IMG/VR virus record: IMGVR_UViG_3300040801_002079
Coordinates: 124,001-188,000 of that record
Length of the DNA: 64,000 nt
Strand: one strand, 5' to 3'
A model generated the notes under the pieces. The model was not told the origin of the DNA and made no database searches. It was given only the letters and a program-made list of their open reading frames with translations. Made by a program: the position numbers and the translations under genes. Positions 7,433-41,107 of this stretch are shown piece after piece (the stretch's first letter is position 1; each line of letters begins with the position of its first letter).

Positions 7433-10400
7433 TTACCCTGAAACTGTCGGTGTTACGGTTATTGTCGGTGTAACCGTAGCTGTAACAGTTGGTGTAACCG
7501 TTAATGTCGGTGTAACCGTAGCTGTAACAGTTGGTGTAACTGTATTTGTTGGCGTAATCGTTGGTGTAACCGTAGTAGTCGGAGTTACTGTTGGGGTTAA
7601 TGAAATAGTAGCTGTAACAGTTGGTGTAACGGTTGGTGTAGGAGTAGGAGTAGCTTCGATGCCCTTCCATTTTAAAACCAGAGAGTCAATAACTTGCTCA
7701 ACTGTGAAATCATTTAATCCACCCTGAATAAAAATAACTTCACCTATATCAGCATTGAGTCCATCAACCATTGTCATATCATTACAAAATATCCATGATT
7801 CATCCACAACAAATGAATCAACATCCAGTGTTCCAGTGTCAACAATTTCACTGTTATAATATGCCTTAACAGACGTACCATCCTTGAATATTCCACGAAT
7901 AACAATTTCACCCGCTTCGGGATTATTTCCTACACCTTGTGTTAATGTTAATTCCGTTCCTCCATCTGGATAGAACGTAGCTATCGGTCCATCATCAACA
8001 GTGGAATTATAGAGTCTAATTCTTGCTGAACTTGTGTCGGTACTAGAAAAGAATGTGTCGGTGGAACTGTTAGCTATATTGGCAGTTACCCAGAACATCC
8101 CAACATTTGAAAAATCACTTATAGCGTTCCCCTGTGTTCCAACATTTACCGCGCCCGTCACACGGGCAACACTGAGGCCGTTAAATGCATTTTCTCTATA
8201 TGTTATATTGGCTGCATTCCTCCATGAGGGCATTGTGCCGGAATTATTAACCCATGCAGAAACTGATTGACCATCAGTTGGGTTAGTTATAATTTCCCCC
8301 TCCGATGATCCCGTTGATAACCACTGTCCATCACTTGCGTCAAGCCATGTTATAACGGAAACATCCGTATCATCAATCCACCAATTTGGTTTATCATATA
8401 AGTCATGATATGTGAAGCCATTGCCGCTATTGTAGAAGAATGAAATGTCTCCATCAGCTAATAAAACATCACCGTGCACGGCTTGTCCTATATTGCCTTG
8501 GAATTTATATCCAGTATTGGAGCCATAAAGTCCCATATTGGTGTACATCCATTGATTGTCACCAGTATTAGACGTTGGATTAGATGGGGTGTTGGTTACA
8601 GTATGCCACTCAAACGGAGACCCGTTTACAGAAATTCCCATTCTGCCAAGAGTTGAATCCCATTGGACGCAAATTAAATATCGCTGAAGTCTCTGATATT
8701 CTTCACTGAATAGTAAAATTTCATCGTCAATTAAATCTGAATTATTTCTACAAACAAACGCTATTTCGTTTCGGTGTGTACCAAAACTATCAGATATTGA
8801 TATGCCGGAATCATAAGGGTTATAGGGATTATTAACTTCACTCACGTACCTAATCCCTCGTCCTCTGAGCATCAAGAACCACCCATCTCCTTGCCCATCT
8901 TCGCCTGCTGGTCCCTTTTCTGAGCCAACACTTATAAGCGTTTTATCAGAAACATCTTCCATTGGCTCACACCATATCCAGTGGAACCAATCATTATCAA
9001 AATTAAATGATTCTGCTCTTGTTGAACCACTATTCCATCCAGATGTTGAATTATTTGAAAGCACATTATATTCCCTTCCAGTTATCATATCTTCATCTCT
9101 AACGGTGGAAATATCCCATGGAGTTGACATATCAAATTCATAAAAAGCGTCATAGGCATGTGTCATAAAGAGCTTTGTACCATCTGAGCTAATATCAATT
9201 CCATATATCTGCGATGAATCACCTTGCAGGTAATTAAAGTTATGACTGTTAGTTAATGTTGCGCTGGTTATATCCCAAGCCGTACTCAGTGTATATTGTT
9301 CAAGCTCTGCAAAATCTGCTGTTCTATTGCGGCACATTACATACATTTCAGTGCCATCGGGCTTAAATTTTAATCCTACTGGAGAGTCGGAGGTTGACGT
9401 TGTTGCAAGTGGAGTTCCACCAGATACACTTGATGTTATATCCCATGGTGTTCCTAATGTGTATTCAGAGATAGCATCTGTGCCAATAGATGTGCCGAAG
9501 AACTTTGTTCCATCGGGGCTAATATAAATACCATGCATCTCACTATTAACTACAAGCTCCCCCGCAATGGGTGCAGCATTTATATCCCAAGGTGTTGAGC
9601 ATGTTAACTGATAAATCTTAAATGTGCTGGGATTTCTCTCTTCTACCGATACATAGAGACTGGTGCCATCGGGACTGAATATAGCAGCATTTGTAGCGGC
9701 CCAGCGTGATATATCTTCAACATCAGGATGATAAAGATTGCGTCTATTCCCATCACATGTTGCTGTTGTTACATCCCATGGCGTTGACAGTGTAAATGTG
9801 AACAAATCGCTGCCGAATTCGGTAAGGATATATAATTTGGTTCCGTCTGAAGATATATCCATATCCTGTGGAACCCCATCCCAGAAATTAATTTCAAATC
9901 TACCTTCTAGTGTTGCTGTGCTCAAATCTTTAGGTGTTGACATTAGATATTGTGTAATCCAATTACCCTCTTCACCTAAAATATACAATCTGGTATTATC
10001 ATCGCTTATATGAAGCGCTCTTGCTCCGCTGTGTAGGCTTTCATCTACTGATAGTTCAATACTATCATAAGTCATGGTACTAATGTCCCATGGAGTTGAA
10101 AGGCTAAATGAATGCAATGCAAAGTAATCTGCTGGCACTAAATATCGATCAGCTATAGCAAAATATTTAGTTCCATCGGATGAAAAAGCTCCCCCATACT
10201 CTGCCCAATCAACGCCCAACGTCGATAAATCAAGGTAGTAATAACTTGTAGGGTCTAATGTTGTTATATCCCAAGCAGTGGATAGAGTATATGATGCTAC
10301 GCCACCATTGCCGTGCTCATACATAATCAAACCATCTGAGGAAAATTCAATACCATCTTCTTCACCTACATAATAATTAGTATCACTTGTTTTATAATCG

Positions 10401-12055
10401 GTGTACGCTGAATTTATATCCCATGGTGTTCTTAACTCTATCTGATAAACATTGTCTTCCCATGATCCATAAAAATAAAAATATCTACCATCTATGCTAA
10501 AAGTTGATGCTAGGGTGCCACCATCTATCCAAGAAAAGAATTTAGCATTTGATACATGTGCCCCCTCTATTGACCATGGTTTGTTAATTGTTTGCTCACA
10601 TATTCCACTATTCCCGAAATCTGTCACGAATAACCGTGTCCCATCATCTACAAAGTGTATACCAGTAGGATTTTGCCACGGTTCCGTTACGTGCATTCTT
10701 TCCACAATATTGGTGAGGTTCATCGGATCAAACCCTTCGTCTCTTATATTCGTGGTTCTATCTCCGGTTGTTTCATCCCAATATGCCGTTTTTATAAATG
10801 CCCCGGAACTCTCGTCTGCTGTGTTTTCGTTTGTTATAACAGGCTTTTCTCTGGAAGCATCTTGATTAAACTCGAACCATGTGATAACACTTGGGTATAT
10901 TGGAGGAGCGGGTGACGGCGTAGGGGTTGGTGCCAGATAAACATATTCGATGATCAGTTTTTCAGATATTCCAACCTTAACATGTGAATGTTTGGGCGTA
11001 CTACACTCACCATCACCGTCAAATCCAGCCGTATTAACATATCCATATAATTTAACGAATCCAGTGCTTGCAGATGTTGGGACCAAATCAGCTAGATGTA
11101 TAATGGTTTCATTCGCATTTTTATCATATTCAGATCGAATAATCTTATACTGCTTATCACTATCTGTCCCAGTATCTTCAATTTCAATATAACGATTAGG
11201 AAGCATACCGGTTCTTAATTGAATACTTCCGTGATTAGAACCTTCTGTTGTATTCGTAAACGAAGTTTGGGTCGTACTATGTAAATTTATTGTTGTAAAG
11301 TTGCCATCGAAGTTATAACTTTCGATTAAATATGCTCCGTTATTCTTGTTACCAATTTTATATTCGACAATGGCGTTATCCAATCCAACCGCTATTGGTT
11401 TACTCTCAGATATAACAATTGTTGTAATATTTGATATGGAATCGTATGTTGCAGATAGTACAGTGTACATATCGTCATCAACATCCGCATTATATAGTTT
11501 AAACCTGCCCTCATTGATCAACTCTTGTGTATAATTTCCCTTAACAAGAATTTGTGTCTCTGTGGTAGTGTGTACATCAAGGGTTCTTACGGGAACAACC
11601 AAAAATAATTTCTGAAAAGCTAGCTGTGGACGAATATCGCCCCTAACCACAATTGAATCATATGTTGGTATGGAATCAATTTGTGCGCGAACATCATATG
11701 TGTTATTACCTGAAATGCGAACGGTGTCAGTTACGTTTTCTATTTCATTGATGGGCAATACGTTTACAAGATCGGAGTTATCAAAAATTACACCATAACC
11801 ACCAAGACACTCAAACAAATCACAGCAGTCAACCGAGTCGAATCCACATTCGCCATCCCATGTATATCCATAACCCACTGTTTGACACAAGGGATTATTT
11901 TTATAGTCGATGTTAAAAAATATATTTTCCTCGAACTTTACATCCAAATCTTCTCGAAAATTATAGTTCTCAATAATTTCTAGAATTTTCGTATGGTACG
12001 GTTTAACGTCAAGAAAATATTTTTTAAACGAGTCGGTTGGTCTTGAGTTAGTCAT
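7433..12055 (-). CDS. Large virion fibre/adhesin: N-terminal virion module, STPWDI beta-propeller repeats, LamG-like domains, C-terminal TPTV tail
   Basis: 1540 aa; about 10 xSTPWDIxxA repeats; two VITW-starting LamG-like segments; late promoter at 12061-12067 on -. Confidence 0.8.
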   Translation of the reverse strand: MTNSRPTDSFKKYFLDVKPYHTKILEIIENYNFREDLDVKFEENIFFNIDYKNNPLCQTVGYGYTWDGECGFDSVDCCDLFECLGGYGVIFDNSDLVNVLPINEIENVTDTVRISGNNTYDVRAQIDSIPTYDSIVVRGDIRPQLAFQKLFLVVPVRTLDVHTTTETQILVKGNYTQELINEGRFKLYNADVDDDMYTVLSATYDSISNITTIVISESKPIAVGLDNAIVEYKIGNKNNGAYLIESYNFDGNFTTINLHSTTQTSFTNTTEGSNHGSIQLRTGMLPNRYIEIEDTGTDSDKQYKIIRSEYDKNANETIIHLADLVPTSASTGFVKLYGYVNTAGFDGDGECSTPKHSHVKVGISEKLIIEYVYLAPTPTPSPAPPIYPSVITWFEFNQDASREKPVITNENTADESSGAFIKTAYWDETTGDRTTNIRDEGFDPMNLTNIVERMHVTEPWQNPTGIHFVDDGTRLFVTDFGNSGICEQTINKPWSIEGAHVSNAKFFSWIDGGTLASTFSIDGRYFYFYGSWEDNVYQIELRTPWDINSAYTDYKTSDTNYYVGEEDGIEFSSDGLIMYEHGNGGVASYTLSTAWDITTLDPTSYYYLDLSTLGVDWAEYGGAFSSDGTKYFAIADRYLVPADYFALHSFSLSTPWDISTMTYDSIELSVDESLHSGARALHISDDNTRLYILGEEGNWITQYLMSTPKDLSTATLEGRFEINFWDGVPQDMDISSDGTKLYILTEFGSDLFTFTLSTPWDVTTATCDGNRRNLYHPDVEDISRWAATNAAIFSPDGTSLYVSVEERNPSTFKIYQLTCSTPWDINAAPIAGELVVNSEMHGIYISPDGTKFFGTSIGTDAISEYTLGTPWDITSSVSGGTPLATTSTSDSPVGLKFKPDGTEMYVMCRNRTADFAELEQYTLSTAWDITSATLTNSHNFNYLQGDSSQIYGIDISSDGTKLFMTHAYDAFYEFDMSTPWDISTVRDEDMITGREYNVLSNNSTSGWNSGSTRAESFNFDNDWFHWIWCEPMEDVSDKTLISVGSEKGPAGEDGQGDGWFLMLRGRGIRYVSEVNNPYNPYDSGISISDSFGTHRNEIAFVCRNNSDLIDDEILLFSEEYQRLQRYLICVQWDSTLGRMGISVNGSPFEWHTVTNTPSNPTSNTGDNQWMYTNMGLYGSNTGYKFQGNIGQAVHGDVLLADGDISFFYNSGNGFTYHDLYDKPNWWIDDTDVSVITWLDASDGQWLSTGSSEGEIITNPTDGQSVSAWVNNSGTMPSWRNAANITYRENAFNGLSVARVTGAVNVGTQGNAISDFSNVGMFWVTANIANSSTDTFFSSTDTSSARIRLYNSTVDDGPIATFYPDGGTELTLTQGVGNNPEAGEIVIRGIFKDGTSVKAYYNSEIVDTGTLDVDSFVVDESWIFCNDMTMVDGLNADIGEVIFIQGGLNDFTVEQVIDSLVLKWKGIEATPTPTPTVTPTVTATISLTPTVTPTTTVTPTITPTNTVTPTVTATVTPTLTVTPTVTATVTPTITVTPTVSG

Positions 12056-12121
12056 AAATGTATTTATCTTATTATTATCTACTTGAAATCGCCTATTTTG
12101 TTTGATATAATCCTATTTATT

Positions 12122-12751
12122 ATGAGATTTGTAAAGTATCCAAAAACAAACTATCTGCCATGGTCACGCTCTATTGGTGAGGGAGACCGTGTACTTAAAC
12201 ATATGGATATATTTGAAAATCAGCGAGTTATTGTAACTGAAAAAATGGATGGTGAAAATACCACCATGTATCACTCTAAGATTCATGCTCGTTCTCTGGA
12301 TTCCGTTAATCACCCCTCTAGAAACTGGGTGAAAAATTATTGGGCATCTATTCAATATAATATCCCACATGATATTCGAATTTGCGGAGAAAACTGCTTC
12401 GCAAAACATTCTATTCATTATACCAAATTGCCATCATATTTTCTAGGATTTAATGCTTGGAAAGAAAACACATGTCTAGAATGGGATGAAACTATGGAAT
12501 TATTTTCAACCATAGGTATATCTCCCGTCAAAGTTTTATACGATGACATATATGATGAAAACTTAATTCGAACTATTCCAATAAATGAATCTAAGTGTGA
12601 AGGCTATGTTATGCGCCTAGCGCGATCATTCACTATGGATGAGTTTCCGCGTGTTGTCGGAAAGTATGTAAGAGAAAATCATGTACAGACCGATGAGCAT
12701 TGGATGAAAGGTCCAATGATACCCAATATTCTTAAGGAAATAACACTATGA
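12122..12751 (+). CDS. rnl: RNA ligase (Rnl2-like nucleotidyltransferase)
   Basis: KYPKT, TEKMDGENT motif I, ICGEN, EGYVMR, KYVRENH. Confidence 0.88.
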   Translation: MRFVKYPKTNYLPWSRSIGEGDRVLKHMDIFENQRVIVTEKMDGENTTMYHSKIHARSLDSVNHPSRNWVKNYWASIQYNIPHDIRICGENCFAKHSIHYTKLPSYFLGFNAWKENTCLEWDETMELFSTIGISPVKVLYDDIYDENLIRTIPINESKCEGYVMRLARSFTMDEFPRVVGKYVRENHVQTDEHWMKGPMIPNILKEITL

Positions 12752-12993
12752 TTGTACCAGAAGATACCCTTTTAATGGACGGATATGACGATTGTCTAGA
12801 AGGAATTTGTATTCGCTTTGGTCAAGACCCCATTGCAATATATGATTATGATAAAGTCATTAATAAATTAATGGAAGATGGCCTATCAGAGGTTGACGCA
12901 ACGGAATGGTTCGAATATAATATGATTGGTGCGTGGGTAGGAGAAAAGACTCCCGCATTTATCGTGAAAGATGTAGAGTTTGAATACGAATAA
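12748..12993 (+). CDS. conserved phage hypothetical protein
   Basis: DGYDDCLEG...AIYDYDKVI...EWFEYNMIGAWVG pattern common in aquatic phages. Confidence 0.7.
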   Translation: MIVPEDTLLMDGYDDCLEGICIRFGQDPIAIYDYDKVINKLMEDGLSEVDATEWFEYNMIGAWVGEKTPAFIVKDVEFEYE

Positions 12994-13029
12994 ATTTTTA
13001 ATATAAATATACAATAGGAACATTATAAT

Positions 13030-13245
13030 ATGAATGGCAAAACCGCAAAACTTATCCGGAAAGTTGCATTAACTGCGCCCTACGGCAATAAAGGATTTGA
13101 TGAAGAAGAAACAAAATATGTTATGAGGGAAAGCACAATTATGTTGGCACCCGGAGTTAGACTCACAGAAAAGTTGCTCAAGAAATTCTACAAGCAGGGC
13201 AAATTCACCACAGAAGATTTAAGACAGGGCCTTCTTTCAGAATAA
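13030..13245 (+). CDS. hypothetical protein
   Basis: TATAAATA at 13002 and AGGA SD upstream. Confidence 0.65.
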   Translation: MNGKTAKLIRKVALTAPYGNKGFDEEETKYVMRESTIMLAPGVRLTEKLLKKFYKQGKFTTEDLRQGLLSE

Positions 13246-13571
13246 TGAACGATTTTATAATCTTTGATGAAATTATATCAACCGAGCCTAGCGTCAACTG
13301 GCTTGACTATCTGGGTCAATCGAATGTAAATTTGGTTAATTTACATGCATCCATATATGCCCTTCTCTTGGTTCACAGTGATGATGAGTCATTAAGTGGA
13401 GATGAGCAAAAAACACTGGATGAGGCCCGTGATATTCTGGATCAACATATATCACATGACAATCTTTTTGACATTATGGGTGACGAAGTTGGGTCATATG
13501 ATTATGATCCACAATCAGTTTTAAAGTACGCAGTAAGAATTATTGACTTTTATAAAGGAGATTCAACCTAA
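13245..13571 (+). CDS. hypothetical protein
   Basis: TAATG translational coupling to the upstream gene. Confidence 0.65.
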   Translation: MNDFIIFDEIISTEPSVNWLDYLGQSNVNLVNLHASIYALLLVHSDDESLSGDEQKTLDEARDILDQHISHDNLFDIMGDEVGSYDYDPQSVLKYAVRIIDFYKGDST

Positions 13572-13572
13572 A

Positions 13573-13746
13573 ATGCGTAATGAAATGCAAAAGTTGTTAC
13601 AGTTAACACAAGCACTTGAAAAGGCAACTGATCCCGATGAGAGGGATAGATTGGAAGAAGAAATTTTTAATTTGGAAATGGAAATGGAAGACTATGATGA
13701 TAACCAATATAGGACAAACCATCATCAAAAATTTTCTGACTTTTGA
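13573..13746 (+). CDS. small acidic coiled-coil hypothetical protein
   Basis: AAGGAG SD at about 13555; ATG 13573. Confidence 0.6.
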   Translation: MRNEMQKLLQLTQALEKATDPDERDRLEEEIFNLEMEMEDYDDNQYRTNHHQKFSDF

Positions 13747-13754
13747 ATAAATAC

Positions 13755-13836
13755 GGAAAAATGGGAGTGTCTGGTTATATTGGAGTCTCGCTGGGGAGCG
13801 AGTTTTGTTGGGGACCAGACACTCCCTTATTTTTTA
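13755..13836 (+). ncRNA. Candidate structured small RNA or attenuator behind a late promoter
   Basis: ATAAATA 13747-13753; perfect 13-bp stem 13763-13775/13814-13826 enclosing hairpin CTCGCT-GGGG-AGCGAG; T run follows. Confidence 0.45.
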
Positions 13837-13846
13837 GGGCAGACCA

Positions 13847-14053
13847 ATGATTGATAAAGATGAAGTTGCTATTTTAACCAACAATATTACCAATAGTATT
13901 AAAGACATCTTAGAGAATAAAAAAATTAGTTATATGTCAGATACCCCTGAATTTGTGGAGGGATTGTTGGTCGGACTAGAGATAGCTGGGATTTATGGGA
14001 ATGATATTCAAAAAGTTTATTCTGATTTTGTTTCTCGCAATAATAGCGAGTAG
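13847..14053 (+). CDS. hypothetical protein
   Basis: 68-aa ATG ORF. Confidence 0.55.
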   Translation: MIDKDEVAILTNNITNSIKDILENKKISYMSDTPEFVEGLLVGLEIAGIYGNDIQKVYSDFVSRNNSE

Positions 14054-14261
14054 TTGCACTATAAATGATCCTAAGCCGTTTTTTCCAGAAAATGCGATAA
14101 CGTGTGTGCACAAATATGAAAAAGAAATAAAATTCACTTACTTGCCCGAAAATATCAGCAGATTTATCATCAATGACATGACTATGTTCCATATTGCAAC
14201 CATCGATGATAGAAATGTATTTTTAAACATCTACGAAATAGAAAATTACAACTGTGATTGA
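14001..14261 (+). CDS. putative lipoprotein
   Basis: KK + hydrophobic stretch + lipobox IASSC. Confidence 0.6.
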   Translation: MIFKKFILILFLAIIASSCTINDPKPFFPENAITCVHKYEKEIKFTYLPENISRFIINDMTMFHIATIDDRNVFLNIYEIENYNCD

Positions 14262-14559
14262 CTTAAGCAAAATGAGCCTGCCACGTAAAGTCTTGGTTTA
14301 CATGAGACTCCCTCATTCTTATTACCTAAATATGATTACAGCTATTATTGCTATGATACTGTCCGGTATATTTTTACATCGAAGTGTGACGTATCTAATT
14401 AGCGGTGATATGTGGATTGGGATAATAGAGTTTTTTATTGGTTGTATGATTATCATATTTGGAATAATATGTATTTCAAGATTTATGAGAAAATACCATG
14501 ATTACTTATATGGAATCATAACCAAAGGAAAATCCAATTTGGAGATAAAATTTAAATGA
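14254..14559 (+). CDS. membrane protein (2 TM helices)
   Basis: two long hydrophobic segments. Confidence 0.65.
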   Translation: MIDLSKMSLPRKVLVYMRLPHSYYLNMITAIIAMILSGIFLHRSVTYLISGDMWIGIIEFFIGCMIIIFGIICISRFMRKYHDYLYGIITKGKSNLEIKFK

Positions 14560-14876
14560 ATATGAGAATCAGGACAAAATGGGGTCAAATTATTATAGAC
14601 CCTGAAAGAATTTTTGAAATGCGAGTAGTTGTTAATCCATGGGACAATGTTTACAAAGTAGAGTTTGTCATGGACGGCACATATGAGGTTATACCAGCAG
14701 ATGTGGCAAATGCCAATGAGCTTAACGCTCTTATGCGCAGGGTGACCAATGAACTTCACTTTGTAAAACAATACAAGTTCAAAGATACTACTGGACATTT
14801 GCAGATTAATGAAGCAAGAAGGCGGTCAGCCTTTAAGGAGAGGAAAGAGTATGAAGCGAATAATAATGTACAGTAA
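14556..14876 (+). CDS. hypothetical protein
   Basis: ATGA overlap with the upstream gene. Confidence 0.6.
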   Translation: MNMRIRTKWGQIIIDPERIFEMRVVVNPWDNVYKVEFVMDGTYEVIPADVANANELNALMRRVTNELHFVKQYKFKDTTGHLQINEARRRSAFKERKEYEANNNVQ

Positions 14877-15117
14877 ACCAACATGCAGTTTTTGCACTAA
14901 AGCTAAAAAATTGCTTGATGAGAAAATGGTCCCATATGAGGAAAGAGTGGTTGGGAATGGATATTCGGCAGATCAGGTGAGAGAACATTGTCGAAAATTG
15001 GACCCCAATGCCGTAGTAACAACTGTTCCTCAAATTATTTTACAAATTGATACATCTGAGCAGTACATAGGGGGATATACAGAGTTGGCAGTTAAGGTTC
15101 ATTCTGGAACCTTGTAG
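14851..15117 (+). CDS. nrdC: Glutaredoxin
   Basis: MYSKPTCSFC CxxC, TTVPQI, YIGGYTEL. Confidence 0.9.
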   Translation: MKRIIMYSKPTCSFCTKAKKLLDEKMVPYEERVVGNGYSADQVREHCRKLDPNAVVTTVPQIILQIDTSEQYIGGYTELAVKVHSGTL

Positions 15118-15125
15118 GAGGAAGT

Positions 15126-15443
15126 ATGGATGGTGTTTTAATAGTATTGGCTCTACTTCTGGGCGTTATTATTTCCGCGTGTGCAATAGCATACAAAGAA
15201 AGAAAATTTGAGCCACCGGTCACTGATGAACAAGATAATGTTGTTGTTAACGGCGTTGTTTTGGGTAAGTATTACGGAGACCCTGAAACCAAAACATGCG
15301 TAGAAGTTATAGCGGTTGAAGATGATATGGTCGCCTTTCGACATATGAGCGAAGAAATTCACAGTATGCCAAAAAGCGCATTTTTAGAAAAATATTATAA
15401 GTATCCCAACGGATGTGAGTTCCCGGAAATTGATAGATACTAA
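15126..15443 (+). CDS. membrane-anchored hypothetical protein
   Basis: N-terminal TM helix; GGAGG SD. Confidence 0.65.
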   Translation: MDGVLIVLALLLGVIISACAIAYKERKFEPPVTDEQDNVVVNGVVLGKYYGDPETKTCVEVIAVEDDMVAFRHMSEEIHSMPKSAFLEKYYKYPNGCEFPEIDRY

Positions 15444-15717
15444 AGTAGTACACTGTCAGAGCGAACCATATGATATTTATATTGGTAGACCCAGTATATG
15501 GGGTAATCCGTTCAAAATAAATGATGGGATGACCCGCAAAGAAGCTATAAATGCCTATAGGGATTGGATTCTATATTCCCCAGATGCTGAAGAGCAGCGA
15601 TCTAAATTACACACATTAAAAGGAAAAACACTTGGATGTTGGTGTAAGCCAAAATCATGTCATGGGGATGTTTTGGTTGAATTAGCCGACAATAACGTGC
15701 TAGACTTGCTATCATGA
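15430..15717 (+). CDS. DUF4326 family protein
   Basis: YIGRPSIWGNPF...LKGKTLGCWCKPKSCHGDVL signature. Confidence 0.85.
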   Translation: MIDTKVVHCQSEPYDIYIGRPSIWGNPFKINDGMTRKEAINAYRDWILYSPDAEEQRSKLHTLKGKTLGCWCKPKSCHGDVLVELADNNVLDLLS

Positions 15718-16160
15718 AATACATTAAACAGGACATAACAAAGGTTGAGCGTGGCATCATTGTTCATGGAGTGAATTGTTTAGGTGTTATGGGCAGTGGT
15801 GTCGCGCTAGCTATTCGAAACGCCTTTCCAGTTGTATATGAAAAGTTTAAAGATGCCCCCACTGGAAAAGACATGTTGGGCACCACCCATATGATTACTG
15901 TAAAAGATGATCTTTATGTTGCGAATTGCTACACCCAAGTGAACTATGGTTCAGATAACAGGCGTTACGCAGACTTAGATGCTGTTCGTAAATGTTTAAC
16001 GGATTGCTATGATTTTGCCGATTTAATGCAACTCCCATTATGTTCAGCTAAAATAGCTAGCCTTCGCGGTGGTCTGGATTGGGATACAGAAGTTGAACCT
16101 ATTTTTTTGGAACTAAATAAAGAGTATACGAACGTAGACGTTGCAATTTACTATATATAG
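15714..16160 (+). CDS. Macro domain protein (Poa1p/Appr-1-p processing type)
   Basis: QDITK, IVHGVNCLGVMGSGVA, IASLRGGLDW; ends in TAG. Confidence 0.9.
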   Translation: MKYIKQDITKVERGIIVHGVNCLGVMGSGVALAIRNAFPVVYEKFKDAPTGKDMLGTTHMITVKDDLYVANCYTQVNYGSDNRRYADLDAVRKCLTDCYDFADLMQLPLCSAKIASLRGGLDWDTEVEPIFLELNKEYTNVDVAIYYI

Positions 16161-16358: not shown

Positions 16359-16565
16359 ATGGACTTAGAGAAAAAGGAACAGCTAGAAAAGCTGCATGAC
16401 GGAATTGAAGAATTTTTAACATTTATTGAAGAACACGAGGATATTGAAGAGGAAGATGGCGAGTATGAGTTTTTAGCCGATGAATCTGGTGTATCCAATA
16501 CTGAATGGGATAATTTTATTGAATCCCTTAATGTTGTTAGTGAACATATTGAAAAATTAAAATAG
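16359..16565 (+). CDS. small acidic hypothetical protein
   Basis: very Glu/Asp-rich; same frame; ends in TAG. Confidence 0.65.
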   Translation: MDLEKKEQLEKLHDGIEEFLTFIEEHEDIEEEDGEYEFLADESGVSNTEWDNFIESLNVVSEHIEKLK

Positions 16566-16931
16566 ATGTATACTGCATACGTATTAACAGAAAAATCTAG
16601 AAAGACCCTGTTCTTTCTTTTTCCACCAAAATATCCTGAGGTTATTGGTCACCATATAACCGAAACCTTCGGGGTTTCCAAAGATGCTGAAGCTCCGGAA
16701 ATGCCAACGCTTGTTGAGGTTGTTGGCTACATCGACAATGGTGATGGAGTTGAGGGATTCTTGGTGGAAATAGACGGGTCTAGTGATCGCCCATCTGGTG
16801 GTAAATATCACATTACATGGTCAATTGATCGTGATAAGGGATATAAGCCTGTTAATACTAATGATTATACAAATGATGCAAAACCGGTTAAGCCTGTACG
16901 ATTGCAGGTTGAACCCAAAGTGCTCCGGTAG
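16566..16931 (+). CDS. 2H phosphoesterase (cyclic phosphodiesterase-like)
   Basis: two HxT motifs, GHHITE and KYHITW, about 50 aa apart; its stop TAG lies inside the tRNA gene. Confidence 0.65.
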   Translation: MYTAYVLTEKSRKTLFFLFPPKYPEVIGHHITETFGVSKDAEAPEMPTLVEVVGYIDNGDGVEGFLVEIDGSSDRPSGGKYHITWSIDRDKGYKPVNTNDYTNDAKPVKPVRLQVEPKVLR

Positions 16932-16999
16932 CTCAGTTTGGTTAGAGCAAGAGCTTCTAAAACTCATGGTCGTGGGTTCGAATCCCGCCCGGAGCGCCA
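16922..16999 (+). tRNA. tRNA with CUA anticodon in canonical register (putative amber suppressor), encoded CCA
   Basis: 7-bp acceptor GCTCCGG/CCGGAGC, D arm GCTC/GAGC, loop TT-CTA-AA (16955-16961), T arm GTGGG-TTCGAAT-CCCGC, G73, CCA; anticodon stem has two mismatches. Confidence 0.8.
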
Positions 17000-17011
17000 A
17001 GAATTAAAGTT

Positions 17012-17320
17012 ATGTTGACAGAAGGCAAATACAGAAGTAACATAAAAACTGCGGTGTCTAATGTTAGACCTAACCGTCCACCACCAGCACCTAAGGGAAC
17101 TAATACAGTGAAAAAGTCCAGAATAGACATAGATGTAAGCCCTGAAGTCTTTGTTGAAATTTACGAAGCTGTAAGCGATGAAGATACAAAAGCATTTGAT
17201 ATAAATCTCTTTGTTGACGGTAAGTTAGCAGGGAGAATGACAGACATAAGTGCGGAAGATGGGGGCACTTTTTCAACATTAAACGCAAATGCAAGGAGAA
17301 ATATAAAAGATGAGCAATAA
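17012..17320 (+). CDS. hypothetical protein
   Basis: 102-aa ORF after the tRNA. Confidence 0.55.
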   Translation: MLTEGKYRSNIKTAVSNVRPNRPPPAPKGTNTVKKSRIDIDVSPEVFVEIYEAVSDEDTKAFDINLFVDGKLAGRMTDISAEDGGTFSTLNANARRNIKDEQ

Positions 17321-17555
17321 TGAATTAGAAAGAGTTGAAAGATTGCAAAAAGTGGACATTAGTCCGGGTGATATACTGATTGTTTACGTAGATTATGGTA
17401 AACTTCCATCAGATAAAAGAGAGGCGTATGCTGAAAATATCTTAACATATTACAAAAAGGCGTTACATCGAAGTGCGCTTAAAGATGTTAATATAATATT
17501 AGCGCCTAACACTTTTGATCATGCCGTTCTTCACGTAGTGGAAGAGCATATATAA
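17310..17555 (+). CDS. hypothetical protein
   Basis: 81-aa ORF overlapping the upstream gene. Confidence 0.6.
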   Translation: MSNNELERVERLQKVDISPGDILIVYVDYGKLPSDKREAYAENILTYYKKALHRSALKDVNIILAPNTFDHAVLHVVEEHI

Positions 17556-32505: not shown

Positions 32506-33957
32506 ATGAACATGAACACAACTTTTCTAAAATCAATTCTTAACGTACACGGTGCGAAGACCGATGGATACAAGTTTGATCATCACAAGCAGACTGTTCC
32601 CGGTATGACCAACGCCTTTTCTTACATCGAATCCCGAGGAACTAACTTGGATTGGGATAACCCCCGAACCCTGTTCTTTGGATTACAGATGTATCTTAAA
32701 GAGTATATGACTCAGCCTGTTACTCATGAAGATATCGATGCCATCATTCCCCTAGTGGAAAAATATGGTGTTGAATTCAACGAGAAGGGATGGAGACATA
32801 TTGTTGATGCCCATGGAGGCATTCTTCCATTGAAAATTCGGGCAGTTAAAGAGGGTACAGTGATGCCATTAAGTAATGTAATGGTGTCAGTTGAAGCCAC
32901 TGATCCCGAGTGCTACTGGTTAGCACCTTTCGTAGAAACTGCTTTGCTCCGTGCAGTGTGGTATCCAACCACGGTTGCATCCAATTCATTCCGCGCCAAG
33001 GAAATCATCAAAGGATTCTTGGATGAGACTGCTGATAACGGTGATCTTGAACTTCCGTTCAAGTTGCATGACTTCGGTGCAAGGGGTGTATCTTCCGCTG
33101 AAAGTGCACAGATTGGAGGTGCAGCACATCTTGTCAACTTCATGGGTTCTGATACCTTTGAGGGTGCGCTTGCAGCCATGTTGTATTACGACACTGATAT
33201 GCCAGCCGGTACGATTCCTGCTGCCGAACACTTCACCATTACCTCTTGGGGTCCAGAAGGTGAAACCAGTGCGTACCGAAATATGCTTCGGACTTTCGGT
33301 GGTCCTGATAAAATGCTTGCAGTGGTGTCTGATTCTTACGACATGTATAATGCTGCCGAGCATATTTGGGGTGAAGAGCTTCGTGATGACGTTATCAACA
33401 TGGGTGGAACCTTAGTGGTTCGTCCTGATTCTGGTGACCCACTGGTTGTTCCCGTTGATGTCATTGAAATTTTAATGGAGAAGTTTGGTTACACTATCAA
33501 CAAGAAGGGATACAAGGTTCTTCCTGATTGCATTCGAGTTATTCAGGGTGACGGTATCACCGTTGATAACATCAAAGCCATTCTTACTCGCATGAAGTCT
33601 CGTAAGCTTAGCGCATCTAATATTGCATTCGGAATGGGCGCTGGTCTGCTTCAGCAGGTTGACCGTGATACCTACAAGTTTGCAATGAAGTGTTCTGCAA
33701 AGGAAATCAATGGTCGATGGGAAGATGTTTGGAAAGACCCTAAGACTGATTCCGGTAAGAAGTCCAAGCGTGGTCGTGTCACGCTGGTACAGGATCGCAA
33801 TACAAAAGAGTTTAGAACCATTAGACTTGATGGGCCAACTTCTGTTAAGGAAACGGAACTAAATGTAATGCGAACTGTATATAATAACGGTGTTGTTGAG
33901 TCCGAGTTTCAGACGTTTGACGAAATTCGTGAACTTTCAAATTCGTACTTGAAATAA
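32506..33957 (+). CDS. nadV: Nicotinamide phosphoribosyltransferase
   Basis: TDGYKFDH, LHDFGARGVS, PAAEH, VVSDSYD, VVRPDSGDP, VIQGDG, FGMGAGLLQ; SD spacing favours ATG 32512. Confidence 0.96.
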   Translation: MNMNTTFLKSILNVHGAKTDGYKFDHHKQTVPGMTNAFSYIESRGTNLDWDNPRTLFFGLQMYLKEYMTQPVTHEDIDAIIPLVEKYGVEFNEKGWRHIVDAHGGILPLKIRAVKEGTVMPLSNVMVSVEATDPECYWLAPFVETALLRAVWYPTTVASNSFRAKEIIKGFLDETADNGDLELPFKLHDFGARGVSSAESAQIGGAAHLVNFMGSDTFEGALAAMLYYDTDMPAGTIPAAEHFTITSWGPEGETSAYRNMLRTFGGPDKMLAVVSDSYDMYNAAEHIWGEELRDDVINMGGTLVVRPDSGDPLVVPVDVIEILMEKFGYTINKKGYKVLPDCIRVIQGDGITVDNIKAILTRMKSRKLSASNIAFGMGAGLLQQVDRDTYKFAMKCSAKEINGRWEDVWKDPKTDSGKKSKRGRVTLVQDRNTKEFRTIRLDGPTSVKETELNVMRTVYNNGVVESEFQTFDEIRELSNSYLK

Positions 33958-35843: not shown

Positions 35844-36416
35844 ATGGATTTACATGAATTTAATAAAAATGCAATAAAAACAGAGTCTTTAGTCGATACT
35901 GTAATTACAGATAGAGCTATTTTAATGGAATCTTTGGTTGCCTTTGAGCAGGTATCAGAATTATTGGATGCATTAAAAAAGAGTGCTTTTTATAATAAAC
36001 CAATAGATGTTGAGAAGCTTATGGGTTCAGCCGATTCAATCAATAAAATTGGATATGTACTCTCAAATGAAGACATATGGGAAATAGGGGCGACAAAAAA
36101 TGACGATATTAACCCTCGTTTATTCCATGCCATAATTGGAATTTTAACTGAAGCGGGTGAACTTGCAACAATATTGATAAATCACTTGCAGGGCGAAGAA
36201 TTGGATACAGTCAACATGCTAGAAGAATTTGGCGACATTGCATGGTATCAAGCAATCGCATATGATGAATTGAATGTTGATCCATACCATCCACTGGTAG
36301 CAGTGATTAACAAACTAAGGGCTAGATACCCAAACAAGTTTACTTCAGATGATGCTATAAATCGTGATGTAGACAGTGAGCGGGCTATACTTGAGGATTC
36401 CTTAAAGGGTGAATAA
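35844..36416 (+). CDS. MazG-like nucleotide pyrophosphohydrolase
   Basis: GILTEAGEL...EEFGDIAWY...KLRARYPNKF. Confidence 0.85.
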   Translation: MDLHEFNKNAIKTESLVDTVITDRAILMESLVAFEQVSELLDALKKSAFYNKPIDVEKLMGSADSINKIGYVLSNEDIWEIGATKNDDINPRLFHAIIGILTEAGELATILINHLQGEELDTVNMLEEFGDIAWYQAIAYDELNVDPYHPLVAVINKLRARYPNKFTSDDAINRDVDSERAILEDSLKGE

Positions 36417-39122: not shown

Positions 39123-39455
39123 ATGAAAACAATAAACGAAAGAGCCGATATTATATCAAACACTTTTCAGAATAAAGCACTTAGCTTTCTTAAAGGAATG
39201 GAAGAACGAATGGGGAATGATTTGATTTATTCTCTAGCTCTTGAAGCTGGAAATGTTTTTCTCTGCGTTGCTGCACACCCATCAATGACACCAAAACGCT
39301 GGGACACAGAGCGGGAACGTATTCTGTTCTTAATTGATGAAGAGGAATATGGAATGGATCAAGATGAACTTATTGAGGTTCTCTCTGAGCGCCTAGAAGA
39401 TCATATGTATTATGTCACTGCGGGACCCGAAGAAAATGAAACTGAGACATCTTAA
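39123..39455 (+). CDS. hypothetical protein
   Basis: late promoter 39095-39101, GAGG SD. Confidence 0.65.
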   Translation: MKTINERADIISNTFQNKALSFLKGMEERMGNDLIYSLALEAGNVFLCVAAHPSMTPKRWDTERERILFLIDEEEYGMDQDELIEVLSERLEDHMYYVTAGPEENETETS

Positions 39456-40029
39456 GCCCGTACCACAAACCGACTATGATCCGCGTGATCCAATTGGAAC
39501 AGTGTATACATTTAGACATCCCGATGGTATGCGTGGCACCGTAACTGTATTAGAAAAAATTGAAGATGAAGCCTCAGGGGTATTTGTCGGAGTGAAGTTT
39601 TCCGAGGAAACCAATGATGCCATAATGAATTTTATTGAATCTCAGGATATCCCAAATCCTGTAACAAAAGATAAACTACATTGTACTGTTATGTACACAT
39701 ATAGTGATGCCCCTGATTTAATTGAAGAAAGTAGACCCCCTCTTATCCCCGCATGGAATGCTACACCGGATAAATTTGAAATATTTGAAACACAGGATGA
39801 TAATAATTGCTTGGTTTTAAGAATAAAATGTGATGAACTAACCGAAAGGCATGAGAAAATCATAGCGGATTACGGAGTTGTTTATACGCACGAGGAATAC
39901 AAGCCACATATAACATTATCATATGATTGTGGAGATTTCGATATTTCAACGTTGGACAAAGATGCGTTACCTGATGAAATCCTTATAACAGAGGAGTATG
40001 CATCATCGATTGATCCAGACTGGGTATAG
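39436..40029 (+). CDS. acb1: Anti-CBASS nuclease Acb1 / T4 gp57B-like 2H phosphoesterase with N-terminal extension
   Basis: VGVKFSEET...IPNPV...KLHCTVMY...YKPHITLSY...EEY...DPDW follows T4 gp57B along its length. Confidence 0.85.
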   Translation: MKLRHLKPVPQTDYDPRDPIGTVYTFRHPDGMRGTVTVLEKIEDEASGVFVGVKFSEETNDAIMNFIESQDIPNPVTKDKLHCTVMYTYSDAPDLIEESRPPLIPAWNATPDKFEIFETQDDNNCLVLRIKCDELTERHEKIIADYGVVYTHEEYKPHITLSYDCGDFDISTLDKDALPDEILITEEYASSIDPDWV

Positions 40030-40031
40030 TG

Positions 40032-40038
40032 ATAAATA
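40032..40038 (+). promoter_or_regulatory. T4-type late promoter driving the tmRNA
   Basis: ATAAATA just after the acb1 stop and before the acceptor piece. Confidence 0.7.
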
Positions 40039-40043
40039 AGTAT

Positions 40044-40328
40044 AACATTGTACGATCCATTTAAGGATTTATTGTGGACGGCGGTTCGATTCCGCCCATT
40101 TCCACCAAAAGCATACCTAATGGGTATATTTTATGATGGGAATGCACTGGTTTCGACATGGTAAGTTGGTAAATGAGGACAATGCGGCAACCGTGAAAGT
40201 CGTTAGGGTAAAACCAAAGAAGCAAAAAACTAAATGCAAACGATAGCATATATGATCAGGCCCTTGCCGCTTGATCGTGGGTTTAGCCAACCTTGAACCA
40301 GAACGGGTTAGGGGGGAGTAATCCCCCC
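40044..40328 (+). ncRNA. ssrA: Circularly permuted (two-piece) tmRNA; tag ANDSIYDQALAA
   Basis: acceptor piece with T arm and CATTTCC-A-CCA ends at 40107; coding piece starts GGGAATG at 40138 (G3:U70, A73); tag frame 40236-40274; terminator 40311-40328; late promoter 40032-40038. Confidence 0.9.
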
Positions 40329-40351
40329 GAATTTTATCAAAAGGGACTTCT

Positions 40352-41107
40352 ATGAATCACGCAAAAAATGATGAGACTTACAACGATAACAATAATAACA
40401 ATGAACAGCCTCTTTTTCCATTTTTACCTAACAGGGAACAAATAAGGTCCTTTAAAAGAACCATCCCAGTAGCGGTCTATGACTTCTACATTACTGATGA
40501 AATAAAAGAACCAGATGTGTACATGGAGTTAATTCAAACTCTTAAAAGTGCTGATCCTCAGGATACAATTTTCATCTATTTAAATACTCCGGGCGGGAGC
40601 CTCTATACTACCATTCAGATAATGTCGGCAATCACTAGCTCACAGGCAAAGGTCATAACATGCCTTGAAGGGCAGGCATGTTCTGCTGGAACATTCATTT
40701 TCTTAGCGGGAGACACTAAAATAGTTAATCCCCACTGTACGTTCATGGTTCATAATTATAGCCAAGGAGCAAGTGGTAAGGGTAACGAAATTGTATCCCA
40801 TGTTAATTACATGGATCGATATTTTAAAAGACTAGCTGAAGATGTATACACTGAGTTTTTAACCAAAACTGAGTTGGAATCCGTTATTAAGGGTGATGAC
40901 ATGTGGATGGATTCACACGAACTGGTGAAAAGATTAGATGCCAACAACCATGACTACATCTACACGGGCCAAGATTTGGATGAAATATTAGGCAGAGACC
41001 CTGATGAGATTTCAGATGAAATGGAAGATGCTTCTAAGCCCAAACAAAGGGCAAAAAAGAAAGTAACTAAGAAAAAAGCTTCGAGGAAAAAAACCGCGTC
41101 TGATTAA
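40352..41107 (+). CDS. clpP: ClpP-like serine protease with Lys-rich C-terminal tail
   Basis: YLNTPGGS, ACSAG (Ser), FMVHN (His), DMWMDSHE. Confidence 0.9.
   Translation: MNHAKNDETYNDNNNNNEQPLFPFLPNREQIRSFKRTIPVAVYDFYITDEIKEPDVYMELIQTLKSADPQDTIFIYLNTPGGSLYTTIQIMSAITSSQAKVITCLEGQACSAGTFIFLAGDTKIVNPHCTFMVHNYSQGASGKGNEIVSHVNYMDRYFKRLAEDVYTEFLTKTELESVIKGDDMWMDSHELVKRLDANNHDYIYTGQDLDEILGRDPDEISDEMEDASKPKQRAKKKVTKKKASRKKTASD

What the first reader, a model, noticed from the sequence alone, without database searches (positions are those of the whole stretch)
16922..16999. Putative amber suppressor tRNA(CUA) in a genome that is not TAG-recoded
Seen: canonical spacing (position 26, 5-nt stem, 7-nt loop, 5-nt stem, 5-nt variable loop) places CTA at 34-36 with U33 and A37. 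The anticodon stem has only three Watson-Crick pairs (GAG/CTC) with A:A and C:A ends. There is no A20, so it lacks the Arg identity element; G73 is compatible with Gln/Trp/Lys-type charging. Long late genes (1540, 766, 647 aa) have no internal TAG, so TAG is not a general sense codon. Inference: a conditional suppressor, a decoy or substitute for anticodon-nuclease defences, or a degenerating tRNA-Arg(UCU).
Basis: partly seen in the sequence, partly recalled or inferred. Interest (0 to 1): 0.65.

Follow-up and report, generated by a model that had tools for sequence, protein, structure and literature searches.

The report
Phage amber-suppressor tRNA, weak anticodon stem
A complete 317-kb jumbo phage that uses the standard genetic code carries an intact tRNA able to read the UAG stop codon; it belongs to a phage-only tRNA family already seen in Xanthomonas phage XacN1, whose purpose is still unknown, and the family's anticodon stems are unusually weak.

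Summary
Window 16922-16999 (+) is a canonical 78-nt tRNA with anticodon CUA, U33, A37, G73 and an encoded CCA. Its anticodon stem has three Watson-Crick pairs flanked by A27·A43 and C31·A39.

It is neither an assembly artefact nor a decaying tRNA-Arg:
- Contigs from two runs span it with no differences.
- The same arm occurs in both tRNA-Sup genes of Xanthomonas phage XacN1, in Xoo-sp13 and in more than 35 distinct viral contigs.
- The acceptor and T stems of this family covary strongly.

The genome is a complete virus record from a microbial mat and is not TAG-recoded. TAG ends about 16% of its genes.

Three family-level results appear to be new:
- A 31:39 mismatch occurs in 42% of phage CUA tRNAs, against 4% of other phage tRNAs.
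- TAG stops are depleted near these tRNAs (9.5% against 16.8%), which points to real suppressor activity. This genome shows no such depletion.
- A tmRNA gene is often nearby, but that association is statistically marginal.

Here the tRNA sits at a position specific to this lineage and overlaps the last 10 nt of the upstream gene. My best reading is a host-charged (Gln and/or Lys), probably low-efficiency amber suppressor acting in trans. Its biological role is unresolved. It is a new member of a known but unexplained kind.

The parts
16922..16999 (+). tRNA gene, anticodon CUA (reads UAG), 78 nt, G73, CCA encoded
   Evidence: ARAGORN. Rfam tRNA 61.1 bits. Sequence. Contigs of runs X2 and X3 span it with 0 differences and 0 gaps.
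16950..16966 (+). Anticodon arm AGAGC-UUCUAAA-ACUCA. The anticodon is at 16957-16959. There are three Watson-Crick pairs, with A27·A43 and C31·A39 mismatched. On its own the arm folds as a 3-bp stem with a 9-nt loop.
   Evidence: Sequence. Isolated arm -0.7 kcal/mol. The same arm type occurs in XacN1, Xoo-sp13 and viral contigs.
16566..16931 (+). Upstream ORF (121 aa, phrog_36523, two H-x-T motifs). Its last three codons and its TAG stop (16929-16931) are tRNA nucleotides 1-10.
   Evidence: ORF list. PHROG hit 6.6e-30. The C-terminus ..EPKVLR matches the conserved end of 28 homologues, none of which has a tRNA within 4 kb.
40015..40365 (+). Permuted (two-piece) tmRNA, tag ANDSIYDQALAA, tag frame ends in TGA. 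A possible functional partner of the suppressor (inferred, not shown). It lies 23 kb downstream.
   Evidence: ARAGORN. Rfam RF04321 123 bits and RF01850 98.6 bits. Tag stop codon.
40352..41107 (+). ClpP-like protease ORF that starts inside the 3' end of the tmRNA gene. It may degrade tagged proteins, or it may be a prohead protease.
   Evidence: Pfam CLP_protease 2.1e-21. phrog_1827 'ATP-dependent protease' 4.3e-59.
12083..12751 (+). RNA ligase gene 4 kb upstream of the tRNA. Listed as context for the rival tRNA-repair / anticodon-nuclease reading.
   Evidence: Pfam RNA_ligase PF09414, 4.1e-30.

Best explanation
This is a real tRNA gene under selection, with anticodon CUA. It belongs to a family of amber-suppressor-type tRNAs that I found only in phage sequence; the founding examples are the two tRNA-Sup genes of Xanthomonas jumbo phage XacN1. 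The phage uses the standard code and encodes no synthetase of the Lys/Asp/Asn or Gln/Glu families, no release factor and no SmpB. The tRNA must therefore be matured, charged and used by host enzymes, helped by the phage's own CCA-adding enzyme.

From E. coli precedent, a CUA tRNA with U35 is taken by LysRS or GlnRS, and G73 shifts insertion toward Gln at reduced efficiency. Once charged, it would compete with release factor 1 at UAG and cause partial read-through of UAG-terminated mRNAs in the infected cell. It does not decode in-frame sense TAGs, because this genome has none.

The weak anticodon stem is a family trait, not damage. In other systems an unpaired 27:43 pair in CUA tRNAs raises UAG read-through and lets UAA be read, and a 31:39 mismatch loosens first-position decoding at a cost in stability and charging.

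In this phage the gene sits at a lineage-specific position and the genome shows no avoidance of TAG. I therefore expect a recently placed and/or low-activity suppressor.

Shown: the gene, its structure, its family, the selection on it, the absence of recoding, and TAG depletion around relatives.
Inferred: charging, the amino acid inserted, the suppression level and the benefit to the phage.
For: The tRNA call and its canonical tertiary positions come. No indel is seen in the runs' contigs. Relatives with the same arm are XacN1 (two copies, annotated tRNA-Sup) and Xoo-sp13 and the IMG/VR contigs.

Covariation in a 37-member alignment: 94% of cells are paired, 12 pairs have changes on both sides, and 0 of 500 shuffles reach the observed values. 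The acceptor stem has 7 of 7 pairs and the T stem 4 of 5 pairs with compensatory changes. Pairs 27:43 and 31:39 are unpaired in 12 and 21 of 37 members.

The 31:39 mismatch occurs in 16/38 CUA tRNAs against 25/604 other phage tRNAs (p = 3e-11), and against 6/61 other A36 tRNAs (p = 3e-4).

TAG makes up 9.5% of stops in 34 dereplicated CUA loci and 16.8% in 109 control loci (p = 1e-4), and the difference has the same direction in three GC strata. XacN1 has only 18 TAG stops among 592 genes (PMC5852040).

The core motif is not part of any tRNA in 185,579 prokaryote species genomes.

The standard code is supported. No RF, SmpB, RtcB or class IIb/Ic synthetase was found, and a CCA-adding enzyme is present.

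Precedents come from PMC13092985, PMC3664417 and PMC9976931.
Against: There is no expression, charging or suppression data for this tRNA or any family member, and no RNA run holds the locus.

This genome uses TAG at the ordinary rate (16.3%, against 15% in GC-matched control loci), and TAG stops are evenly spread. So nothing in this phage shows that the tRNA is active.

After TAG there is no excess of long extensions and no closer back-up stop than after TAA or TGA. The XacN1 authors likewise found no read-through targets.

The isolated anticodon arm is barely stable (-0.7 kcal/mol), and in yeast a 31:39 mismatch reduced tRNA level and charging.

The TAG depletion in relatives could have preceded acquisition of the tRNA rather than resulted from it, as the Borges et al. 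model proposes. The family members are not phylogenetically independent, so the p-values are optimistic.
Confidence: 0.6

Rival explanations
1. A passenger or an evolutionary intermediate. The tRNA was acquired recently by horizontal transfer and is currently nearly neutral in this phage. It would be either the first step toward TAG recoding (suppressor first, in-frame TAGs later) or a remnant of a recoded ancestor.
For: None of 28 homologous neighbourhoods has a tRNA at this position. The gene is isolated from the phage's main tRNA cluster at 207-240 kb. The genome shows no TAG depletion or patterning. Borges et al. describe standard-code phages that picked up suppressor tRNAs as a step toward recoding.
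Against: The family is widespread in locally standard-code contexts and shows strong purifying and compensatory evolution. XacN1 keeps two copies inside its terminal repeat. The recoding model expects TAG to be rare first, whereas here it ends 16% of genes. The gene is fully intact, including the encoded CCA.
Confidence: 0.2
2. Counter-defence RNA. The tRNA is not meant to decode. It would act as a decoy or sponge for a host anticodon nuclease that targets Lys- or Arg(UCU)-type anticodon loops, working together with the nearby RNA-repair genes.
For: The body resembles tRNA-Lys(UUU) and tRNA-Arg(UCU). The loop YUCUAAA is one base away from the Lys(CUU) and Arg(UCU) loops. An RNA ligase (PF09414), a macro-domain/phosphatase-like ORF and a small protein with two H-x-T motifs lie within 5 kb.
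Against: The anticodon CUA and the loop are invariant across the family, although the search patterns themselves fixed much of the loop. A decoy would be expected to copy the target anticodon. It cannot substitute for a cleaved sense tRNA. TAG-stop depletion in carrier phages is what translation activity predicts, not decoy activity. No defence system is known to target a CUA tRNA (my knowledge, not tested).
Confidence: 0.07
3. A decoder with an expanded loop. With 27:43 and 31:39 open, the arm is a 3-bp stem with a 9-nt loop (C-Y-U-C-U-A-A-A-A), and it would promote frameshifting or four/five-base decoding at specific sites rather than simple UAG suppression.
For: Thermodynamic folding gives a 3-bp stem and a 9-nt loop. 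The double mismatch is shared by 9 family members. Engineered tRNAs with 8-9-nt loops are known to read extended codons (my knowledge).
Against: About half of the family has a normal paired 31:39 (U-A, A-U or U·G) and a 7-nt loop, so triplet reading is the family's default. I did not search for frameshift sites and met no split genes that would need them. U33 and the CUA register are conserved.
Confidence: 0.05
4. An artefact or pseudogene: an assembly indel in a tRNA-Arg(UCU), or a decaying copy of one.
For: Most BLAST hits in isolated phages are annotated tRNA-Arg. The string CUUCUAA, which is the Arg-UCU loop, is present one base out of register.
Against: Contigs from runs X2 and X3 span the gene with 0 differences and 0 gaps. 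The identical register is present in independent phage genomes. A20 and C35, the Arg determinants, are absent. The phage already has an intact tRNA-Arg(UCU). All tertiary positions are canonical.
Confidence: 0.02

Closest known systems
The two tRNA-Sup(CUA) genes of Xanthomonas citri jumbo phage XacN1 (Yoshikawa et al. 2018, PMC5852040)
   Same: This is the best DNA match (84.7% over 72 nt). The two share the anticodon arm (AGAGC-YUCUAAA-ACUCN with C31·A39 and an unpaired 27:43), the D- and T-arm type and the variable-loop type (UGGUC here, GGGUC in XacN1). Both phages are jumbo, use the standard code and also encode a permuted tmRNA. One XacN1 copy also has G73. The XacN1 authors also found no read-through targets.
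   Different: The acceptor stem differs. XacN1 has two tandem copies inside its 66-kb terminal repeat, about 1 kb from the tmRNA; here there is one isolated copy 23 kb from the tmRNA. XacN1 has few TAG stops (18 of 592 genes) whereas this phage has about 16%. There is no shared gene order.
Suppressor tRNAs of TAG-recoded (code 15) phages such as crAss-like, Lak and phAss-1
   Same: They are phage-encoded, have anticodon CUA and are charged by host enzymes. phAss-1's copy shares the D and T arms (75% identity) and has a weak U31·G39 pair.
   Different: Those phages have in-frame TAG in many late genes, read as Gln. The phAss-1 tRNA has the Gln-type U1:A72 with G73 and a different stem. This genome has no in-frame TAG requirement, and its tRNA has G1:C72.
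Laboratory E. coli amber suppressors with unpaired 27:43 (tRNA-Trp Su7 variants of Schultz & Yarus 1994; tRNA-Thr(CUA) with G27·A43), as summarised in PMC13092985
   Same: They have a CUA anticodon with the top pair of the anticodon stem open. This was reported to raise UAG read-through and, in tRNA-Trp(CUA), to allow UAA reading.
   Different: Those are engineered or selected mutants of cellular tRNAs. Here the feature is natural, recurrent in a phage family and combined with a second mismatch at 31:39.
tRNA-Trp(CCA) with a 4-bp anticodon stem in Blastocrithidia, Condylostoma and some bacteria (PMC13092985)
   Same: A shortened anticodon stem is used as a natural device to decode a stop codon.
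   Different: Those tRNAs keep a sense anticodon and read UGA by near-cognate pairing in recoded genomes. This one is fully cognate to UAG and sits in a genome that is not recoded. That paper does not mention phages.
Yeast sup70-65 tRNA-Gln(CUG) with an A31·C39 mismatch (PMC3664417)
   Same: It has a mismatch at the 31:39 base of the anticodon stem that is linked to stop-codon reading.
   Different: It is a eukaryotic mutant that reads UAG by first-base wobble, and it is unstable and poorly charged. The orientation here is C31·A39 and the anticodon is already cognate.

Membership tests
tRNA (Rfam RF00005) | Cloverleaf that scores above the family's gathering threshold | tested here: met
   61.1 bits against a gathering score of 29, full-length model match 1-71. 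ARAGORN also calls it.
tRNA (Rfam RF00005) | Conserved tertiary positions (U8, A14, G18G19, G15:C48, T-loop UUCGAAU, G53:C61) | tested here: met
   Read directly from the sequence and from the ARAGORN drawing.
Amber suppressor tRNA | Anticodon CUA at positions 34-36 of a 7-nt loop, with U33 and a purine at 37 | tested here: met
   Loop UUCUAAA, CUA at window 16957-16959.
Amber suppressor tRNA | Is aminoacylated and inserts an amino acid at UAG in vivo | not testable with these tools
   No RNA run holds the locus. The only indirect support is TAG-stop depletion in loci of relatives, which this genome does not show.
XacN1-type phage tRNA(CUA) family (defined here) | Arm R/N-GAG-N / YUCUAAA / N-CUC-N on an Arg(UCU)/Lys-like class-I body, occurring in viral sequence | tested here: met
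   37 distinct members aligned with 76% mean column identity. The best BLAST hit is XacN1 tRNA-Sup. The core motif is in no tRNA of the prokaryote genome collection.
XacN1-type phage tRNA(CUA) family (defined here) | Helices kept by compensatory change (evidence of function) | tested here: met
   Acceptor stem 7 of 7 pairs and T stem 4 of 5 pairs with changes on both sides; 0 of 500 shuffles reach the observed scores.
tRNA-Arg(UCU), intact or degenerate | Arg identity set: A20 and C35 (plus U/G36) | tested here: not met
   Position 20 is U, 35 is U and 36 is A. The identity set is taken from established knowledge; the part of the PMC9976931 table shown did not include the Arg row. A separate intact tRNA-Arg(UCU) exists in the genome.
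tRNA-Pyl (ARAGORN's label) | Pyl-type architecture: 6-bp anticodon stem, 3-nt variable loop, small D-loop lacking G18G19, atypical T-loop | tested here: not met
   The tRNA has a 5-position stem, a 5-nt variable loop, a 10-nt D-loop with GG and a canonical T-loop. ARAGORN's label follows the anticodon only. I did not search for pyl genes.
Gln-type amber suppressor (supE-like, code-15 phage type) | Bacterial Gln identity: G73, U1:A72, G2:C71, G3:C70, G10, U35 (PMC9976931) | tested here: inconclusive
   G73, G10 and U35 are present. G1:C72, C2:G71 and U3:A70 do not fit.
Lys-type amber suppressor | Bacterial Lys identity: A73 and U35 (U34, U36) | tested here: inconclusive
   U35 is present but the discriminator is G73. 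19 of 25 family members with an encoded CCA have A73. A73-to-G73 is reported to lower efficiency and give partial Gln insertion.
TAG-recoded (code 15) phage genome | In-frame TAG in conserved genes; coding density rises clearly when TAG is read as sense | tested here: not met
   Coverage is 0.903 under code 11 and 0.908 with TAG as sense, no better than for TGA or TAA. The three long TAG read-through frames are adjacent genes with their own start codons.

The most novel reading that the evidence does not exclude
Phage CUA tRNAs with deliberately weakened anticodon stems (27:43 and 31:39 open) form a dedicated phage tool for perturbing termination. They would be relaxed decoders that read UAG, and perhaps UAA, in host and phage mRNAs of standard-code infections. 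They would work as a module with a phage tmRNA (here followed by a ClpP-like protease) that clears the ribosomes and proteins produced by read-through. In this phage, the 10-nt overlap would also mean that RNase P processing of the tRNA cuts the stop codon off the upstream gene's mRNA, feeding that same rescue pathway.
Probability: 0.15. Interest if true: 0.8.

Novelty: new member of a known kind. Interest (0 to 1): 0.5.

Why it matters
Suppressor tRNAs in phages are usually explained by stop-codon recoding. XacN1 showed in 2018 that a standard-code jumbo phage can carry them with no visible target, and that has stayed unexplained. This window adds a second complete genome with the same tRNA type. 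[quoted passage not shown] If the weak stem tunes how strongly or how broadly stop codons are read, that bears on three questions: how phages manipulate termination in infected cells, how stop-codon recoding begins, and how suppressor tRNAs might be designed. For this one gene taken alone, the result is ordinary: an intact suppressor-type tRNA of a known kind, with no sign in its own genome that it is used.

Tried and rejected
- Near-identity search of 6 kb around the tRNA, and a tblastn of the 647-aa protein against isolated phages: no match. The phage has no sequenced close relative in that collection.
- A relaxed ARAGORN run (second half) gave only noise and was ignored.
- Read-through targets: extensions after TAG are not longer than after TAA or TGA. 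The three long in-frame cases are adjacent genes with their own starts, for example a helicase followed by an SbcD/Mre11-like nuclease beginning MFTDIHFG. TAG genes do not cluster by region, strand or gene length.
- Isotype by nearest neighbours with the anticodon arm masked: inconclusive. Leave-one-out accuracy was only 62%, and the reference set was biased toward Lys by my control scan. The nearest bodies are Arg(UCU) and Lys(UUU). tRNAscan-SE isotype models were not available.
- My first control pattern had the wrong spacing and found nothing. I corrected it.
- tmRNA linkage: 6 of 53 CUA loci against 3 of 112 control loci. After dereplication this is 4/34 against 3/109 (p = 0.055), or 5/35 with XacN1 (p = 0.02). 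It is suggestive only, and the tmRNA tag frames end in TAA or TGA, as most tmRNAs do.
- Shared gene order between this phage and other carriers: essentially none.
- Bacterial genomes: the core motif has 19 hits and none is a tRNA.
- Phage-encoded partners: no release factor, SmpB, RtcB, class IIb synthetase or Gln/Glu-type synthetase.
The single read-laying run used 3,001 letters.

Full report
WHAT IS THERE. Window 16922-16999 (+) is a tRNA gene. ARAGORN reports anticodon cta. Rfam's tRNA model matches end to end at 61.1 bits, against a gathering score of 29. Parsed from the sequence and drawn by ARAGORN, it has these parts:
- a 7-bp acceptor stem, GCUCCGG/CCGGAGC;
- U8 and A9;
- D arm GCUC-AGUUUGGUUA-GAGC;
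- A26;
- anticodon arm AGAGC-UUCUAAA-ACUCA;
- variable loop UGGUC;
- T arm GUGGG-UUCGAAU-CCCGC;
- G73 and an encoded CCA.

The anticodon CUA is at 16957-16959, flanked by U33 and A37. Only pairs 28:42, 29:41 and 30:40 are Watson-Crick. Everything outside the anticodon stem is canonical.

THE GENOME. The window is bases 124001-188000 of a single 316,801-bp contig. This is an IMG/VR virus record with direct terminal repeats, rated 100% complete. GC content is 39.4%, and the genome carries 43 tRNA genes plus a permuted tmRNA. Public runs that hold the locus come from one microbial-mat metagenome study. The genome has no close relative among isolated phages. The CUA tRNA is isolated, because the main tRNA cluster lies at 207-240 kb on the other strand.

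NOT AN ARTEFACT, NOT DECAY. Logan contigs of runs X2 (16534-17358) and X3 (16667-17372) span the gene with no differences and no gaps. Depth is only about 4x and both runs are from one sample, probably the source, so this is weak independent support.

The comparative evidence is stronger. The best match in isolated phages is an annotated tRNA-Sup of Xanthomonas jumbo phage XacN1. XacN1 has two tandem CUA tRNAs with the arm AGAGC-CUCUAAA-ACUCC, that is, the same three central pairs, C31·A39 and an unpaired 27:43. Xoo-sp13 has GGAGC-CUCUAAA-ACUCU, again with C31·A39. Pattern scans of IMG/VR found the same arm type in more than 50 contigs.

In an alignment of 37 distinct members, all 7 acceptor pairs and 4 of 5 T-stem pairs show compensatory double changes. 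These helices are 97-99% paired, and none of 500 column shuffles reaches the observed values. These are functional tRNAs under structural selection. The idea of a degenerating tRNA-Arg(UCU) fails. The Arg determinants A20 and C35 are absent, and the phage has its own intact tRNA-Arg(UCU).

NO RECODING. A greedy non-overlapping ORF set under table 11 covers 90.3% of the genome. Stops are TAA 257, TGA 118 and TAG 73. Reading TAG as sense gives 90.8%, no better than the same trick with TGA (91.4%) or TAA (89.6%). In-frame extensions after TAG are not longer than after the other stops. The three TAG cases that run on for more than 100 codons are neighbouring genes in the same frame with their own start codons. 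TAG stops are evenly spread over the genome, over both strands and over gene-length classes. The genome encodes no release factor, SmpB, RtcB, Lys/Asp/Asn-type synthetase or Gln/Glu-type synthetase. It does encode a CCA-adding enzyme.

WHAT THE FAMILY SHOWS. First, the weak anticodon stem is a family trait. In scans that left positions 31 and 39 free, 16 of 38 distinct CUA tRNAs have a non-pair at 31:39, mostly C·A, with some C·C and A·C. The rate is 25 of 604 in other class-I tRNAs from the same kinds of contigs (odds ratio 17, p = 3e-11), and 6 of 61 in other tRNAs with A36 (p = 3e-4). A G-C or C-G pair at 31:39 occurs in 2 of 45 CUA tRNAs against 255 of 604 others. The 27:43 pair is open in 26% against 13% (p = 0.05). 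The 31:39 mismatch also appears in CUA tRNAs with unrelated stems, namely the second copy in L055 and the one in L132. Nine members, including this one and both XacN1 copies, carry both mismatches. Because the members are related, the p-values overstate independence.

Second, phages carrying the family avoid TAG stops. TAG is 45 of 473 stops (9.5%) in 34 dereplicated CUA loci, against 196 of 1166 (16.8%) in 109 control loci centred on tRNA-Lys(UUU). The p-value is 1e-4 and the direction is the same in three GC strata. XacN1 has 18 TAG stops among 592 genes. This is what an active suppressor would select for, although depletion could also have come first. This genome is the exception at 16.3%.

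Third, the core motif occurs 19 times in one-genome-per-species prokaryote data and never inside a tRNA. As far as this exact-motif scan can tell, the type is restricted to viruses.

PLACEMENT IN THIS PHAGE. The upstream ORF (16566-16931, phrog_36523, two H-x-T motifs) ends in ..EPKVLR-TAG. Its last three codons and the stop are tRNA nucleotides 1-10. In 28 homologues from other viral contigs the protein ends the same way (..PEVLK..PKVFR), yet none has a tRNA within 4 kb. The tRNA's position is therefore specific to this lineage, and its 5' acceptor strand doubles as the conserved C-terminal coding sequence. One consequence follows by inference. On a shared transcript, RNase P cleavage at tRNA position +1 would leave the upstream message without a stop codon.

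HOW IT MOST LIKELY WORKS. With no phage synthetase available, host enzymes must charge the tRNA. The body is of the Arg(UCU)/Lys(UUU) type, but similarity could not resolve the isotype. According to the identity review, amber suppressors with U35 tend to be lysylated. A73 supports Lys identity, and A73-to-G73 lowers suppression and gives partial Gln insertion. Of the family members with an encoded CCA, 19 of 25 have A73, while this tRNA and one XacN1 copy have G73. I therefore expect Gln and/or Lys insertion at modest efficiency.

On the ribosome it would compete with RF1 at UAG. Published work links the two mismatches to looser stop-codon reading. An open 27:43 in CUA tRNAs raised UAG read-through and allowed UAA reading. 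A 31:39 mismatch increased first-base wobble but reduced stability and charging. Alone, the arm is barely stable. I cannot tell whether the phage gains from read-through of host messages, from extension of some of its own proteins, or from insurance against nonsense mutations. In this genome nothing shows adaptation to the tRNA, which fits a recent or weak suppressor.

THE tmRNA LEAD. Read-through by suppressor tRNAs is a documented source of substrates for trans-translation (Ueda et al. 2002, as cited in PMC3985003). XacN1's tmRNA lies 1 kb from its suppressors, and the XacN1 paper does not mention a tmRNA. Four distinct metagenomic lineages have a tmRNA 0.7-2.9 kb from the CUA tRNA on the same strand, sometimes with no other tRNA in the locus. 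Against the control loci this is 4/34 versus 3/109 (p = 0.055), or 5/35 with XacN1 (p = 0.02). That is suggestive, not established. Here the tmRNA (40015-40365) is 23 kb away. It is overlapped by an Acb1-like 2H phosphodiesterase ORF on one side and by a ClpP-like protease ORF on the other.

COMPARISON WITH WHAT IS KNOWN. The paradox of a CUA suppressor in a standard-code jumbo phage was reported for XacN1 and left open. Surveys of recoded phages treat suppressor tRNAs as the means of recoding, or as its first step. Short anticodon stems as a device for reading stop codons are known from Blastocrithidia-type tRNA-Trp and from E. coli mutants. The 2026 bacterial survey of 4-bp anticodon stems (PMC13092985) does not mention phages, and the XacN1 paper reported only the CUA anticodon and the search for read-through targets.

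VERDICT. The gene is real and belongs to a known but unexplained kind, so I rate it a new member. The family-level regularities (the 31:39 mismatch, TAG avoidance, possible tmRNA linkage) are the part worth following up.

Noticed in passing
window 16922-16931 (overlap of ORF 16566-16931 with the tRNA): The upstream gene's last three codons and its TAG stop are tRNA positions 1-10, yet they still encode the C-terminus conserved in 28 homologues, none of which has an adjacent tRNA. RNase P processing of a shared transcript would remove that gene's stop codon.
   Followed up: partly
window 39412-41107: The permuted tmRNA (40015-40365, tag ANDSIYDQALAA) is overlapped at its 5' end by an Acb1-like anti-CBASS 2H phosphodiesterase ORF (Pfam 1.2e-33). 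At its 3' end it is overlapped by a ClpP-like protease ORF (Pfam 2.1e-21). A tmRNA next to a ClpP homologue could be a tag-and-degrade pair, or the protease could be a prohead protease.
   Followed up: partly
L001 2912-3070 (XacN1 36047-36205): XacN1's two CUA tRNAs are identical from position 8 to 65. Their acceptor stems differ at six of seven pairs and their discriminators differ (A73 against G73), as if one body were fitted with two charging identities.
   Followed up: no
genome 224164-224251 and 225888-225975 (minus strand; outside the window), also 228818-228903, 231571-231663 and 83385-83476: Two tRNAs with Lys anticodons (CUU, UUU) have a class-II-like architecture with a long variable arm, a 3-4-bp D stem and A73. 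tRNAs with Gly(UCC), Ile(UAU) and Cys(GCA) anticodons are also 86-93 nt long. Long-arm tRNAs with Lys anticodons are unusual and might be charged by an enzyme that does not read the anticodon.
   Followed up: partly
loci L003-L055 against L056-L167: In viral contigs, TAG ends 9.5% of ORFs near CUA tRNAs but 16.8% near tRNA-Lys(UUU) controls. In the low-GC stratum the figures are 4.2% and 15.0%. This window's genome, at 16.3%, does not follow its family.
   Followed up: yes
window 12083-16160: Upstream of the tRNA there is a run of small genes: RNA ligase (PF09414, 12083-12751), glutaredoxin (14809-15117), DUF4326 (15415-15717) and a macro-domain/phosphatase-like ORF (15714-16160). The glutaredoxin has homologues about 2.4 kb from the CUA tRNA in the L046 group of contigs.
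   Followed up: partly
window 7433-12055, 42958-44547, 48083-50383, 51803-53353, 53526-54893: Five large ORFs (455-1540 aa) match phrog_15511. Three of them share its N-terminal domain of about 250-280 aa, while the 1540-aa and 529-aa ORFs match only an internal part of the profile. This is a multi-copy family of unknown function. A nicotinamide phosphoribosyltransferase gene (32506-33957) is also present.
   Followed up: no
L029 2912-2988: A second CUA tRNA in one viral contig has the XacN1-type D and T arms, but its loop is CCCUAAA. That puts C at the almost universally U position 33, with G73.
   Followed up: no
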